NCBI RefSeq assembly: GCF_002571385.2 | Contig: NW_019217844.1 | Span: 647,274-711,273 of the forward strand | DNA from: Stylophora pistillata | Taxonomy: Eukaryota | Direction: 5' to 3' | DNA length: 64,000 nucleotides | Part shown: positions 26,432 to 36,173 of the stretch, in pieces | How the letters are laid out: the number at the start of each line of letters is the position of its first letter | Position numbering within the stretch: the first letter of the stretch is position 1 | Position numbers and translations under genes: made by a program | The notes under the pieces: model-generated | Told to the model about the DNA's origin: nothing | The model's database searches: none | Seen by the model: the letters and a program-made list of their open reading frames with translations, nothing else

Positions 26432-29400
26432 TTACTCCTTTTCCCTCTTATATGATTCCCTGCTCACCTCCTTTGGTTCACCTACGTTGGACTTGTCATA
26501 ACCCGGTACGCCTGCTATGACTCCTGGGATATCCATTTGTGCAATATAATATGGCTCCCCATTGACAATAGTTTTGCCACATCCGAGTAAATGTGCTCCC
26601 TTCCAAACCACCTAGAAATTAAAAAATTTCCGAACTTTAAACCCATGAAATCAATCGAAACATTAACACCTAGTTTCCCTCATTTAGGAAGCCTTCATGT
26701 TGTATTATCCGGATTTGAAATCCAATCATGCAATCATGATGATACTATCAATCATGCAATTACTGATGGTATCATCGATCTCTGAAATAAAATCGTGCAG
26801 TTAAGTTATTGTTGAGCTTTACCTTTTGGGACATCATTTTGAAACTCGAAGTCTGAGATAAAAATGGGGTCTCCACACCAGTCAATGATGATAGCTACAA
26901 ATACTCTCTTTGAAAAACAGTATCTTAAGCTTAAAGATTGTAGAAATAGAAAAAAATTCACATCCACACCTGAGTAAAGTGATTTACTTTCATATCTCCG
27001 ATGGCTTTTCCAGTCGACCAATCATAATCCTTCTCTTCGTCATGCCAAGCTTTAACTGCGGCAGTGAACGATGGGTAAAGGCTACCGAGCGCAATTGTCT
27101 CACCACCCTGCCCCCCTGCCCAGGGGGAATGTTTAAACACTTTTTTATCAGCCCACTGTTGAGCCTGATTGGCTAATGTTTGGTCCAGTATTAGGGGCGA
27201 TGCGCCATGGTTTAATCGATATCTGTTGTGAGCCGCCAGACATTCTTGCTGACATGAGCTGTTACAACCTTCAATAAACAATGACTGAAGTTGCAACTTT
27301 CAACTTTTATCCTGGCATAGACCGAGGCATTCTAAATTTACCCAGGATACTCGCGACTCAATTTTTAAATGAGGATTCGAAACCAAACCATTCGGGCGAT
27401 TTTGCGGTTCTCTCGCCTTTTGACTATGCAAACTAACCTTTTTACGGATACAGTTATAATTATGAGAAACAAAAATATTTATATTGCATTTTGGCTATTC
27501 GAAATCATCTTGCAAATTCATCATTGACATATTCAGAGATGGTTTGAAGAATTACTTCATAAAGGGTAAGAATTACTATTTAGAAGGGTCTCCAAAACTT
27601 ATAGTATGCTCTGTATGAGTTAAGTAATCCTTATAACACCTAGCAAGAACTTTGCAAAATGATACAATGTAACCACTGTTGATATACAATAATGGGCCAT
27701 TTTACATTCGTGAACCTGGTTGCCAAGCCTTCGATCTGGAGTGAGGCGCAAAGTGACTTGTTCTGATGGAGACCAGTAATAGTCTAGTTGGCATGATAAC
27801 AAAGTCATTTACATTTGAAAAGAAGCAACGTTTGTATCAGAACACGGTCACCCTTAGCCTCTTTCCTGTTCAAAGGCTTAATAACGAACCAAGCCCACAA
27901 CTGTAAAAAGGACTTTTCAAAATAATCACATTTTTGATTGGATTTTCCAAGAAAAAAAACAACAACAAAAAATCCTTTTAAATCAACCATTACCAGTTGT
28001 TGAGACGGGGTTCTCTTCAGTCTTGTGCGCAGTTGTAACGTCAGCCAGTGCTAAATAGTACAAGGAAGAGCCTTAATCAGTACGTTGATAAATATATCTG
28101 CCACCGTTTGGAACAAACAAATCATAAATTTTATTGATGGTTGAAATGTTGTCTCACAAATAGACGTTTGCCTCAGGTGAAAGAAACTTGCTTGATTCTT
28201 GGAAAAAAAAACAACTAAAAGACGAGCCACTTGGCCCTGAATAATTACTTTTTTTGACGACTTTTCACATTTAACCTAATGAGGATTTTTCTAAAACTAT
28301 CCGTAACTGTTTACCGACTACACTGACTATAAGAAAAGTTTTAAAGCTAAAAGAGGAAAGGAGGAAAAAGAGAAAGGGGAAGGTCATATGATGAAATGCT
28401 TATTAATTGAGTTTGGTCGGGCTGGACGGGTAAATTTTTAGCTCTCAAGGAGATCTCTGCGCTCGGTCTGTACGTTACGACTTCGAGCCAATATTTTCGC
28501 GCCTTGCCACCTACCTACCCAGTCAACAATTAAATATCATTTTTCACCTTGATCTCCAATGGTCTCTCTAGTTTTTGCTTGTTGGGTTTTTACTTTTTCC
28601 TTGCAGAGTCTCTGCCCGCACGCTGAGTTACTCTTTGCTACAGCACTAATCTGCACCGGAGCTTGCAGCTTGTGTTGTAATGCCTGAATACCTTCCATTA
28701 TCAAGTTGTCCTCTCCCTTTGATCGATAGTTTTGGCTGATAACTCTGCCTCCAGCGGGATATAGACTTGATTGAATCTCTGTTCCGTTCAAATAAGACAA
28801 ACCAATCTTAATGGGTCTTTTTATAAACTTGTTGAGGTTGGAGGGCACACCCTGCCCACGAGGCAGAGAACTTGTTATTTTAAGACCACTCTGATCCAAA
28901 AGTGAAGTTCTATTTCTTTGGATAAGAGGCTGACCAACCAATTTTAGGGTAGAATTCTGGGTATTGTTTGAGCCAACTGATGAAATTTGGTCATCCTGGT
29001 TCTTGAAGGGTAAGCTTTCTGTTTCTTTAGAAAGATGCTTGTCTTGGGGAGAATGAGATGATGTCTTTGGAGTCTCTGTGGTATTCGTAGTGTTTGACTT
29101 AGTTAGTACTCCTACGAAAGGCTCGAAGACTTTAATCAGTGAAATCTTCGGTCTTAAGGGTGTAACTTCCACGTTTTGCATGTCAAACTGTTGTTTTAAT
29201 TTAGGTTGATCATTTAATTTGTTATTTTTATCAAACTTAGCTGGTAATGATGTCAATGAGATCCTTGCTTTCATGGGTGTTATGTTTATTGTTTGCATAT
29301 CAAAATGTGGTGTTAAATGAGGTCGATCATTTAATACGTTATTTCCATTGGTCTTTTCTGATAATGATGCCAGCGACACCTTTGCTTTTAGGGGTGTTAT

Positions 29401-35400: not shown

Positions 35401-36173
35401 TTGGCTGTAGATGCCATCTGTGATTTTGATCACAAAGATGGTGATGGCGATATTTGCCATGCAAGTGAAGAGATTTCCGCTAATAGTGAATCGAATTAGT
35501 ACCACAACTTTTTTTTGGATCATGCAAGACAAGGTACATGATTTCCAAATACATGCAACGTCTTTGCTCGAGTGAAACTCACCTCTAGTTGAACCATAGG
35601 GTACATCATCTAAAATAATAGGAATGGAAGTAAACTCAATAAATCGTCTTGACGCGGTATAATTGATTCATTCATACAACTAAAATTCACTTAGATCGGA
35701 AACGTTTGCCTAACTGTTTGCAAAAGCTAAATTGGCACGATTATAAAATGTGATTGAATTTTTTGGAGTGGAATAATCGTTTATTTTACCACCCTAATTT
35801 GTTAACTCCGCAAAATGCTGGTATCACTGAGCCTGATGGAAGGGCAACAAAAGGAGAGAGAGAGATTAAAAAAGGTATAACTATACTTAGATGTTCATGA
35901 ACACTTGGCGAAGCTGATTGTAACTTGAATGAAAATTTTAGCTCTCTTGCCTTAACCATTCATGATCGGCAAATTAGTCTATTTCCAATTGCGCACCGGC
36001 AGTGAACGAAAGCTAAATAGTACTAACAGAGGTACAAGTCAAAGAGAATAACAGAAAGTTAATCAGGGTGGGGATTCTTTTGTTGTGACTACCATAGTGT
36101 CGCAGATACCTGTTGCGGTGACGCATTGTATCATAAAGAAAATCAGGGCGGAAGAGACAATCTTTGAAACCAT
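26432..36173 (-). CDS. Large secreted CAP - low complexity - ShKT - 40-aa repeats - CAP protein (~1440 aa); exons 36173-36110, 35609-35583, 35045-34597 (CAP-N), 34193-32315, 31584-31522, 30758-30639 (ShKT), 29726-28548, 28050-27994, 27268-26970 and 26611-26432 (CAP-C; last exon may splice at 26468)
   Basis: Signal MVSKIVSSALIFFMIQCVTAT; every junction is GT-AG with matching phase and no in-frame stop; HDFTQIVWKKARKAGCG and NHFTQVVWKGAHLLGCG CAP motifs; CQDMPKYQFSCPRWQARGYC...CRRTCGFC ShKT. Confidence 0.8.
30140..30512 (-). mobile_element. tRNA-derived SINE (family 2)
   Basis: TAGCTCAATGG A box, GGTTCGAGCCC B box, central GTCTTCTCGGATAGG...GGAGGTCCCGTCTCC, (AAAT)n tail; second copy at 51630-51955. 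Confidence 0.85.
31032..31332. mobile_element. MITE with CAGGGGCGGAT / GATCCGCCACTG termini (hAT-like)
   Basis: Imperfect TIRs and G/C-run subtermini; no clean TSD. Confidence 0.6.

What the first reader, a model, noticed from the sequence alone, without database searches (positions are those of the whole stretch)
26432..36173. One ~1440-aa CAP-ShKT-CAP protein hidden behind fragmentary ORFs
Seen: ten exons join in phase from the signal peptide through CAP-N, ~625 aa of acidic Ser/Asn-rich sequence, an unlisted 120-nt ShKT exon (30758-30639), ~390 aa with repeats, and CAP-C. Known: CRISPs place an ShK-like domain directly after one CAP domain. Inference: two CAP domains at opposite ends of a >1000-aa flexible chain with a central ShKT is an unusual architecture, suggesting a tether/cross-linker or a proteolytically processed polyprotein.
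Basis: partly seen in the sequence, partly recalled or inferred. Interest (0 to 1): 0.75.

Follow-up and report, generated by a model that had tools for sequence, protein, structure and literature searches.

The report
Coral double-CAP, double-ShKT secreted giant
A stony-coral gene really does encode one secreted protein of about 1,500 residues with a CAP domain at each end and two small toxin-like ShKT domains in the middle; it is conserved among corals but nobody knows what it does.

Summary
Three details need correcting.

- **An extra 57-nt exon** at 28050-27994 lies between the repeat exon and CAP-C.
- **The stop at 26432 is probably intronic.** Relatives' mRNAs splice at 26468 to a last exon at 25251-25156.

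The corrected model has 12 exons and 1,496 aa. A short isoform lacks a 189-aa repeat cassette.

**Evidence.** RNA contigs and reads from three studies of the same species join exon 4 through exon 10. A relative's intron-less mRNA contig, L005, carries the whole layout in one 1,283-aa ORF. RefSeq XP_066022041.1 of Pocillopora verrucosa ("uncharacterized protein isoform X2", 1,301 aa) maps colinearly on 11 of the 12 exons by tblastn, and on the 27-nt exon by eye.

**Function.** Unknown. I read it as a secreted extracellular scaffold or tether. The linkers carry conserved islands and have no furin-type sites, which argues against a processed polyprotein.

**Novelty.** A new variant of known CAP-ShKT proteins. 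It is already in a database but undescribed in the papers I searched.

The parts
36110..36173 (-). Exon 1: start codon and signal peptide (21 aa plus the first base of the next codon), ends in phase 1
   Evidence: Read. P0087 (P. verrucosa RefSeq) residues 1-21 map here at 15 of 21. Similar signal exons lie upstream of CAP-N in genomic loci L001, L003 and L006. No RNA of this species was laid here.
35583..35609 (-). Exon 2: 27-nt phase 1-1 exon (9 aa)
   Evidence: Splice sites ttttag| and |gtgagt. The equivalent 9 residues stand between the signal peptide and CAP-N in the L005 mRNA ORF and in P0087 (8 of 9 identical by eye). It is too short for tblastn. No RNA of this species was laid here.
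34597..35045 (-). Exon 3: C-x3-C-x3-C motif plus the whole CAP-N domain, phase 1 to 0
   Evidence: Pfam CAP 46.7 bits. Matches solved CRISP and GAPR-1 chains. 23 homologues at 63-89% identity. Contiguous with the acidic exon in L005 (697/698). P0087 maps at 134 of 149.
32315..34193 (-). Exon 4: 626-aa acidic Ser/Asn-rich linker starting NDLHWFE, with five conserved islands, phase 0 to 1
   Evidence: pI 4.69, net charge -39. 31 homologues. Islands at aa 57-123, 162-187, 209-227, 294-301 and 565-591. Single copy in the genome. Donor joined to 31862 by an X2 contig and one X21 read.
31749..31862 (-).
   Evidence: Pfam ShK 37.1 bits. Six Cys. Joints 32315>31862 and 31749>31584 in RNA contig X2 record 12. 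P0087 maps at 38 of 39.
31522..31584 (-). Exon 6: 63-nt spacer exon, phase 1-1
   Evidence: Joints on both sides in X2 record 12. P0087 maps at 22 of 24.
30639..30758 (-).
   Evidence: Pfam ShK 32.4 bits. Joint 30639>29726 in the X2 contig and 2 raw reads of X24. P0087 maps at 37 of 40.
28548..29726 (-). Exon 8: 392-aa basic linker with four 39-aa repeats and a conserved C-terminal island containing C-x4-C, phase 1-1
   Evidence: pI 9.73, net charge +17. Period 117, 3.6 copies. 29 homologues. Island at aa 344-388. Single copy.
29076..29642 (-). Optional in-frame intron inside exon 8 (567 nt, 189 aa). It removes all four repeats and gives the short isoform.
   Evidence: GT..AG joint 29643>29075 in X2 record 9, while X2 record 11 runs through unspliced. 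The same skip is in P0036 and in P. verrucosa isoform X2.
27994..28050 (-). Exon 9: 57-nt phase 1-1 exon
   Evidence: Joints 28548>28050 and 27994>27268 in X2 record 9. The first joint is also in one X24 read. P0087 maps at 16 of 20.
26970..27268 (-). Exon 10: C-x3-C-x3-C motif plus the first part of CAP-C, phase 1 to 0
   Evidence: Pfam CAP 47.3 bits. Aligned to GAPR-1 with the first His and both Glu kept. P0087 maps at 98 of 101.
26468..26611 (-). Exon 11: rest of CAP-C, ending at donor GAG|GT
   Evidence: P0087 maps at 46 of 48, ending exactly at 26468. Contiguous with exons 10 and 12 in L002 and L005.
26432..26467 (-).
   Evidence: Absent from P0036, L002, L005 and P0087, which all continue into exon 12 instead.
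25156..25251 (-). Exon 12: 31-aa tail PDLKWF...HRIL plus stop (TGA at 25158-25156)
   Evidence: P0036 and P0087 each match at 30 of 31. L005 is 94% and L002 87% identical. Acceptor ctag| read.

Best explanation
**Shown.** This is one single-copy gene of a stony coral on the minus strand, 36173-25156, with 12 exons. Its long isoform has 1,496 aa. The order of parts is:
1. signal peptide;
2. a 9-aa exon;
3. CAP-N;
4. a 626-aa acidic linker;
5. ShKT-A;
6. a 21-aa spacer;
7. ShKT-B;
8. a 392-aa basic linker with a four-repeat cassette that splicing can remove;
9. a 19-aa exon;
10. CAP-C;
11. a 31-aa tail.

Each CAP domain is preceded by a C-x3-C-x3-C motif and followed by an exon that begins xDLxWF. 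The small secreted single-CAP gene next door shares the Cys motif, and its tail exon starts with the related DDSEWF. The large gene therefore looks like two such units joined through a ShKT pair.

**Inferred function.** I put about 0.45 on an extracellular scaffold or tether. The protein is secreted whole as a glycoprotein with 20 N-x-S/T sequons in its linkers.
- CAP-C keeps the His/Glu/Glu/His tetrad and could bind metal or lipid.
- CAP-N is conserved but lacks the tetrad at the aligned positions, so it would be a binding-only module.
- The ShKT pair and the conserved linker islands would be further docking sites.
- Splicing would change the distance between the two ends by 189 aa.
For: **Gene model, this species**
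- RNA contig X2 record 12 joins 32315>31862, 31749>31584, 31522>30758 and 30639>29726.
- X2 record 9 joins 28548>28050 and 27994>27268.
- All joints are GT..AG on the minus strand.
- Raw reads from two other studies show three of these joints: 1 read in X21, and 2 plus 1 reads in X24.
- In exon bins the first mates lie on the + strand only.
- Depth is 0 at 31901-32300 in 4 of 4 runs (all).

**Gene model, relatives**
- L005 is an intron-less contig with one ORF of 1,283 aa. Stops precede its ATG. Pfam finds 2 CAP stretches and 2 ShK stretches.
- L002 is a 5'-truncated mRNA with the same order.
- P0036 is a 409-aa ORF on a 1,302-nt contig that runs from ShKT-B to the tail.
- P0087 is XP_066022041.1 of P. 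verrucosa. It maps colinearly on 11 of 12 exons by tblastn; the twelfth, exon 2, is 8 of 9 identical by eye.

**Synteny and copy number**
- Both long exons are single copy in this genome.

**Function**
- No furin-type sites, and few dibasic pairs.
- Conserved islands in both linkers.
- CAP-C keeps the tetrad against GAPR-1 (the fourth His is read directly from NHFTQ).
- CAP-N substitutions are conserved in the 10 homologues I read.
- CAP-like proteins occur in coral skeletal matrix (PMC7853314, passages).
- CAP domains have been proposed as surface anchors for ShKT modules (PMC6409789, passages).
Against: - No single molecule was seen to span the whole 4.5-kb mRNA in this species. The chain rests on overlapping assembled contigs plus 4 raw junction reads.
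They rest on relatives. The 10>11 junction was not seen either, because X2 record 9 ran off the laid stretch.
- L005 and L002 are assembled metatranscriptome contigs. L005 also carries the neighbour gene's mRNA on its other strand, so assembly joined two transcripts there.
- Nothing tested here bears directly on function.
- Expression is low: contig depths of about 4-20 on the laid exons, and raw-read depth of about 1 at 2-6% sampling.
- The acidic linker has only 14% D+E, so a calcium-binding role is not obvious.
Confidence: 0.6

Rival explanations
1. Two neighbouring genes (signal-CAP-N-acidic, and ShKT-ShKT-linker-CAP-C) are joined only by occasional read-through splicing. The joined RNA would be a minor conjoined transcript.
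For: - Reading through the donor at 32315 gives a stop after two codons, so a short product is possible.
- Every internal exon from exon 5 to exon 9 is phase 1-1, so exons can combine freely.
- Junction support in raw reads is thin, 4 reads in all.
Against: - Depth is zero at 31901-32300 in 4 of 4 runs, so no 3' UTR follows the acidic exon.
- No start codon or signal exon was seen for a second gene. Exon 5 starts in phase 1.
- The same join appears in two mRNA contigs of other corals and in a RefSeq model.
- Depth is similar on both sides of the join.
Confidence: 0.06
2. It is a polyprotein precursor. The chain is cut after secretion, or in the secretory pathway, to release CAP proteins and free ShKT peptides as venom or antimicrobial components.
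For: - ShKT peptides are cnidarian toxins. Most ShK-domain genes of S. pistillata are expressed in cnidocytes and gland cells (PMC8913943 passages; PMC8162421 passage).
- The domains sit far apart on polar linkers.
Against: - No RX[KR]R or RxxR site in any of the 10 translated exon pieces scanned. The two long linker exons (1,018 aa) hold 2 dibasic pairs against about 10 expected.
- The spacers flanking the ShKT exons have no paired basic cleavage motif beyond one KK.
- The linker islands are conserved like functional parts, not like discarded spacers.
- Neither ShKT exon shows a Lys-aromatic pair in the loop where ShK has its Lys-Tyr dyad. The dyad's position is recalled, not tested.
Confidence: 0.1
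3. It is a skeletal organic-matrix protein secreted by calicoblasts. The acidic block would bind calcium or mineral, and the CAP and ShKT modules would organise or defend the matrix.
For: - A CAP-like protein is one of 11 proteins shared by stony-coral and red-coral skeletal matrices (PMC7853314 passages).
- Two extracellular ShK-domain genes are calicoblast-specific in S. pistillata (PMC8913943 passages).
- The acidic exon has net charge -39.
- Every relative I could attribute came from coral material: P. verrucosa and coral metagenome or metatranscriptome contigs.
Against: - D+E is only 14.1%, which from recall is well below coral acid-rich proteins.
- The skeletal CAP-like protein described has a different layout, GAPR-1 plus 2 TSP1.
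- The main text of the S. pistillata skeletal proteome paper contains no CAP protein, ShK or pathogenesis-related term.
- I could not link this locus to any published accession.
Confidence: 0.12

Closest known systems
Vertebrate and venom CRISPs (CAP + hinge + ShK-like ICR/Crisp domain)
   Same: - A secreted CAP domain together with a six-Cys ShK-type module in one chain.
- The best solved matches of CAP-N are snake CRISPs, pseudecin at E 1.7e-9.
- The Atlas look-alikes of the orthologue are CRISP clusters, with scores of 0.85 or less, so leads only.
   Different: - CRISPs have one CAP, with the Cys-rich domain directly after it.
- This protein has two CAPs. Its two canonical Pfam ShK domains lie about 630 and 410 aa from them.
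- Pfam reported no Crisp family (PF08562) match at the thresholds used.
Invertebrate CAP-ShKT proteins, e.g. Cumia reticulata CreCAP-ShK type I (PMC6409789)
   Same: - Signal peptide, CAP domain and 2-3 canonical ShKT domains in one secreted protein.
- The paper states that the CAP and ShKT association occurs in more than 600 database proteins (passages).
   Different: - Those proteins are 295-452 aa, with the ShKT repeats directly C-terminal of a single CAP.
- This one has about 1,500 aa, long conserved linkers and a second CAP after the ShKT pair.
Two-CAP-domain nematode proteins (double-domain ASP/VAL, e.g. Na-ASP-1).
   Same: Two CAP domains in one secreted polypeptide. Often one of them is degenerate at the His/Glu tetrad (recalled).
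   Different: The nematode CAP domains are adjacent, on a short linker and without ShKT between them (recalled). Here they are about 1,120 aa apart.
Corallium rubrum skeletal CAP-like protein CR_3-4 (GAPR-1 domain + 2 TSP1; PMC7853314)
   Same: A cnidarian extracellular protein with a GAPR-1-type CAP domain joined to adhesive modules. CAP-C's best solved match is GAPR-1 at E 7.4e-10.
   Different: It has different partner domains (TSP1, not ShKT), one CAP and no long linkers.
The neighbouring 208-aa secreted single-CAP gene (window + strand about 21394-23766; orthologue on L005 minus strand)
   Same: - The same C-x3-C-x3-C lead-in, the same intron after the 'HFxQ' motif as in CAP-C, and a related D-x-x-WF tail.
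- CAP-C and the neighbour's CAP share 47 of 86 residues. CAP-N and CAP-C share 39 of 99.
   Different: It is a single unit with its own signal peptide, and it has no ShKT and no linkers.

Membership tests
CAP superfamily (Pfam PF00188) | Domain match above the curated cut-off (21.1 bits) | tested here: met
   CAP-N exon 46.7 bits and CAP-C first exon 47.3 bits. Two CAP stretches in each of the full-length relatives L005 ORF and P0087.
CAP superfamily (Pfam PF00188) | His/Glu/Glu/His tetrad of the CAP cavity | tested here: inconclusive
   - CAP-C: the first His and both Glu align with GAPR-1. The fourth His is read from NHFTQ in the sequence.
- CAP-N: the aligned positions against pseudecin read Tyr, Trp, Lys and Asp. 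A Glu, a Glu and a His each sit one residue away.
- So the feature is met in one domain and not at the aligned columns in the other.
- Which residues form the tetrad in GAPR-1 and CRISPs is recalled.
CRISP subfamily | Hinge plus ShK-like Cys-rich (Crisp/ICR) domain directly after the CAP domain | tested here: not met
   - CAP-N is followed by 626 aa of linker before ShKT-A.
- CAP-C is followed only by a 31-aa Cys-free tail.
- No PF08562 hit.
ShKT domain (Pfam PF01549) | Match above the cut-off (20.9 bits) with six Cys ending C-x3-C-x2-C | tested here: met
   ShKT-A 37.1 bits and ShKT-B 32.4 bits. Six Cys in each.
ShK-type K+ channel toxins | Free peptide of about 35 aa with a Lys-Tyr dyad (recalled feature) | tested here: not met
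   Both domains are internal exons of a 1,496-aa chain with no flanking convertase sites. No Lys-aromatic pair stands in the corresponding loop. The dyad's position is recalled, so this is a weak test.
Two-CAP-domain proteins | Two CAP domains in one polypeptide | tested here: met
   One ORF with two CAP stretches in L005 and in P0087. In this species the link from CAP-N to the acidic exon rests on those relatives. The link from the acidic exon to CAP-C rests on this species' own RNA.
Coral acid-rich skeletal proteins (CARP/SAARP type) | Very high Asp/Glu content and presence in the skeletal proteome | tested here: not met
   D+E is 14.1% in the acidic exon. The usual threshold is recalled. 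Presence in the skeleton is not testable here because the supplementary protein lists were closed.
Secreted protein | N-terminal signal peptide, no membrane anchor | tested here: inconclusive
   - A hydrophobic 21-aa N-terminus is conserved in P0087, L005, L001, L003 and L006.
- The tail is not hydrophobic (GRAVY -0.92).
- No signal-peptide predictor was available.

The most novel reading that the evidence does not exclude
The protein is a coral-lineage extracellular cross-linker of adjustable length.
- An intact CAP and a conserved tetrad-less CAP act as two different grips.
- They are held apart by an acidic block (net -39) and a basic block (net +17), which could also attract each other or neighbouring chains.
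- A conserved splice switch removes a 189-aa glycosylated repeat cassette to set the span.

If it works at the calicoblast-skeleton interface or in the surface mucus, it would be a new kind of matrix organiser built from "venom" modules.
Probability: 0.12. Interest if true: 0.65.

Novelty: new variant of a known kind. Interest (0 to 1): 0.4.

Why it matters
- CAP and ShKT domains are usually discussed as venom or defence modules in small proteins. Here both are built into a conserved chain of about 1,500 residues, with a CAP at each end and a splice-tunable spacer. That points to a structural or adhesive use of these modules in reef-building corals.
- The gene sits in a cluster of secreted CAP and ShKT genes. 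It looks like a fusion of two copies of the small neighbouring CAP gene type, so it is a clear case of how large mosaic matrix proteins arise.
- In practice, the orthologue is in RefSeq only as "uncharacterized protein". Prokaryote-style gene calls split it into single-exon ORFs, so domain-architecture surveys can miss it.
- The value is limited because nothing is yet known about its function.

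Tried and rejected
**Leads that went nowhere or were rejected**
1. *Neighbour as inverted copy.* After I read the + strand neighbour as an inverted copy of the C-terminal half (ShKT-ShKT-CAP). ShKT-A scored best against the first + strand ShK exon (98) and ShKT-B against the second (101). I rejected this. The neighbour's orthologue on L005 is a complete 208-aa single-CAP ORF with its own signal peptide. The + strand ShK pair therefore belongs to another gene.
2. *Word searches.* Searches with three single exons returned 31, 29 and 23 hits. 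Every one of the 24 hit sequences I read was a single-exon ORF call on genomic DNA, except P0036.
3. *Representative search.* The acidic exon gave 11 hits, none longer than 729 aa. It did not show the full-length relatives that later turned up by another route.
4. *Profile searches against solved structures.* The profile of A1 found 0 chains. The profile of A2 found 1, a flagellar hook protein at E 0.012, which I take as chance.
5. *ARAGORN.* It found no tRNA in the intron repeat at 30100-31500.
6. *Exon 1 end.* One search had exon 1 one base short. One search corrected it.
7. *Papers.* Five searches were answered. None listed a paper describing a CAP-ShKT-ShKT-CAP protein of corals. From six papers I saw only passages found by term search.
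[quoted passage not shown] No tool fetches that accession, so I could not tie it to this window.

I never joined the window's exons into one protein for any search. Full-length questions were answered with natural full-length relatives instead: the L005 ORF (P0086) and P0087.

Full report
**Setting.** The window comes from a stony coral. The public runs that hold this stretch are labelled "coral metagenome" or one coded organism. The assembly has 397.6 Mb in 5,513 contigs. The closest named relative found is Pocillopora verrucosa. I do not know the species name; a guess of a pocilloporid such as Stylophora rests on recall only.

**The observation.** I read the minus strand from 36400 to 26300.
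- Nine exon translations were scanned against Pfam one by one.
  - CAP-N exon: CAP 46.7 bits.
  - First CAP-C exon: CAP 47.3 bits.
  - Exon 30758-30639: ShK 32.4 bits.
- Exon 31862-31749: ShK 37.1 bits.
  - The other five pieces matched no family.
- The acidic exon encodes 626 aa with pI 4.69, D+E 14.1%, Ser 13.9% and Asn 8.3%.
- The repeat exon encodes 392 aa with pI 9.73. It holds four 39-aa repeats, each with an N-I-T or similar site.

**One gene or two: this species' own RNA.** I laid two sets of RNA contigs (X1, X2) and two raw-read runs (X24, X21) on 26901-32900.
- Contig X2 record 12 (poly-A library, 1,160 nt) runs from the acidic exon across 32315>31862, 31749>31584, 31522>30758 and 30639>29726.
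- Contig X2 record 9 (1,529 nt) runs 28548>28050 and 27994>27268, then beyond the laid stretch. It reveals a 57-nt exon.
- All joints have GT..AG ends on the minus strand.
- Raw reads from two other studies show three of these joints:

| Joint | Run | Reads |
|---|---|---|
| 32315/31862 | X21 | 1 |
| 30639/29726 | X24 | 2 |
| 28548/28050 | X24 | 1 |

- In the raw runs, exon bins have first mates on the + strand only. That fits a minus-strand RNA in a usual stranded library.
- All four runs have zero depth at 31901-32300, the intron directly after the acidic exon's donor. I see no sign of a 3' end after the acidic exon.
- Record 9 also skips 29642-29076 (567 nt, in frame, GT..AG), while X2 record 11 reads through it. 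Both isoforms therefore exist.
- Weak points: junction reads are few, 4 in all. The chain is built from overlapping contigs.

**Relatives.** Word searches with single exons found 31 homologues of the acidic exon, 29 of the repeat exon and 23 of the CAP-N exon.
- Every one of the 24 hit sequences I read was a single-exon ORF called on genomic DNA, except P0036.
- Of the 11 contigs over 100 kb that carry an acidic-exon homologue, 7 share their exact length with a contig carrying a repeat-exon homologue, and 5 with one carrying a CAP-N homologue. I take equal length to mean the same contig. This does not show order or strand.
- P0036 is a 409-aa ORF on a 1,302-nt contig. It is spliced. It runs from the end of ShKT-B through the start of the repeat exon, the same in-frame skip, the 57-nt exon and CAP-C. 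After "GEPKE" it continues into 31 residues that match window 25251-25159 at 30 of 31.
- The window has a donor GAG|GT at 26468|26467 and an acceptor just before 25251, with a stop at 25158-25156.

**Full-length evidence.** A scan of public metagenome contigs with the alignment of acidic-exon homologues gave seven coral loci. I mapped single window exons onto them.
- L001, L003, L004, L006 and L007 are genomic.
- L002 and L005 have no introns.
- L005 holds one ORF, 164..4015, of 1,283 aa, with stop codons before its ATG. Its order is: signal peptide, nine residues equivalent to the window's 27-nt exon, CAP-N, acidic region, ShKT, spacer, ShKT, linker, CAP-C, tail.
- Pfam finds two CAP stretches and two ShK stretches in the L005 ORF.
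- L002 is the same mRNA type, cut at its 5' end.
- A signal exon like the window's lies upstream of CAP-N in L001, L003 and L006.
- The cluster of P0036 contains P0087, which is XP_066022041.1, "uncharacterized protein isoform X2" of Pocillopora verrucosa, 1,301 aa. P0087 has two CAP and two ShK stretches.
- P0087 maps colinearly on the window:

| Exon | Identical residues |
|---|---|
| 1 | 15 of 21 |
| 2 | 8 of 9 (by eye; too short for tblastn) |
| 3 | 134 of 149 |
| 4 | 470 of 626 |
| 5 | 38 of 39 |
| 6 | 22 of 24 |
| 7 | 37 of 40 |
| 8, short form (main segment) | 137 of 177 |
| 9 | 16 of 20 |
| 10 | 98 of 101 |
| 11 | 46 of 48 |
| 12 | 30 of 31 |

- One caution: L005 also carries, on its other strand, the mRNA of the neighbouring small CAP gene. 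Its assembler therefore merged two convergent transcripts, and assembled contigs are not single molecules.

**Corrected model.** Twelve exons span 36173-25156 on the minus strand. Phases and split codons were checked exon by exon. Both long exons are single copy in the genome.

**Anatomy and origin.**
- Each CAP domain begins with C-x3-C-x3-C.
- Each is followed by an exon that starts xDLxWF. These are the only two such motifs in the six-frame translation of the window.
- The + strand neighbour (about 21394-23766) is a secreted single-CAP gene of about 208 aa. It has the same lead-in and a related tail that starts DDSEWF.
- The large gene thus looks like two such units. The tail exon of the first unit has grown to 626 aa, and a ShKT pair and a second linker lie between the units.
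- CAP-C keeps the first His and both Glu of the tetrad against GAPR-1, and the last His in NHFTQ.
- CAP-N has Tyr, Trp, Lys and Asp at the aligned positions against pseudecin. These substitutions are conserved in the 10 homologues I read.

**Linkers.**
- They are polar: 65-68% of residues are polar or disorder-promoting, and GRAVY is -0.72 to -0.84.
- They match no Pfam family and no solved chain.
- They are not featureless. The alignment of 31 acidic-exon sequences has 47 invariant columns, and that of 29 repeat-exon sequences has 27.
- Islands lie at aa 57-123, 162-187, 209-227, 294-301 and 565-591 of exon 4, and at aa 344-388 of exon 8.
- Net charge is -39 for exon 4 and +17 for exon 8.
- The two exons hold 11 and 9 N-x-S/T sequons.
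- No exon has an RX[KR]R or RxxR site. Dibasic pairs number 2 in 1,018 linker residues against about 10 expected.

**Function.** Nothing here tests function directly.
- I favour a secreted scaffold or tether (about 0.45). Four things point that way: the chain seems built to stay whole, both ends are conserved binding-type domains, the interior has conserved docking-like islands, and splicing changes the spacer length in two genera.
- A processed polyprotein gets about 0.1.
- A skeletal-matrix role gets about 0.12 and overlaps the scaffold reading.
- A conjoined transcript of two genes gets about 0.06.
- Published context, from passages only:
  - CAP and ShKT association is common, in more than 600 proteins, with ShKT directly after one CAP (PMC6409789).
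  - A CAP-like protein with TSP1 repeats is shared by stony-coral and red-coral skeletons (PMC7853314).
  - Most ShK genes of S. pistillata are expressed in cnidocytes and gland cells, but two are calicoblast-specific (PMC8913943).

**Novelty.**
- The orthologue already exists in RefSeq as an uncharacterized protein, so the gene model itself is not new.
- Five answered paper searches listed no description of a CAP-ShKT-ShKT-CAP protein in corals. The library lacks most subscription journals, and supplements were closed.
- Atlas look-alikes of P0087 are ordinary CRISP clusters at scores of 0.85 or less.
- I rate it a new variant of a known kind.

Noticed in passing
window about 21394-23766, + strand; L005 4607-5233, minus strand: A separate secreted single-CAP gene of about 208 aa converges on the large gene. 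The two stops are about 1.4 kb apart in the window. In the relative's contig L005 the two mRNAs were assembled tail to tail with 592 nt between stops, so their 3' UTRs may overlap. It has the same C-x3-C-x3-C lead-in and a DDSxWF tail.
   Followed up: partly
window 9807-10643, 11027-11338, 15341-15454, 16751-16864, + strand: An Ala/Pro/Thr-rich ORF, a Lys/Glu/His-rich ORF and two Pfam ShK exons lie upstream on the + strand. [quoted passage not shown] Whether that is this gene could not be checked.
   Followed up: no
window 29076-29642, minus strand: An in-frame optional intron inside a coding exon removes exactly the four tandem repeats. It is used in this species and in Pocillopora (P0036, RefSeq isoform X2), so the splice choice is conserved between genera.
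   Followed up: yes
window 30100-30560, 30900-31500 and 27700-28100: Intron stretches show very high summed depth in all four RNA runs, up to about 1.8e5 in contig words, with reads on both strands and many loose ends. They are high-copy repeats transcribed elsewhere. ARAGORN finds no tRNA in 30100-31500.
   Followed up: partly
window 34597-35045, minus strand: CAP-N lacks the His/Glu tetrad at the aligned columns, although Glu, Glu and His each sit one residue away. This state is conserved in the 10 homologues I read, at 63-85% identity.
   Followed up: partly
window 41422-43591, + strand: Two long polar ORFs (311 and 334 aa) of another gene run away from the large gene's 5' end, about 5 kb upstream of its start codon. 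They were not analysed.
   Followed up: no
window 2833-6559, minus strand: ORFs here read like WD40 repeats. This is by eye, with no family scan.
   Followed up: no
L005 about 2770-3050: In the more distant relative, the linker after ShKT-B has two copies of a different Pro-rich repeat in place of the window's four 39-aa repeats. The repeat cassette turns over while the C-terminal island is kept.
   Followed up: no
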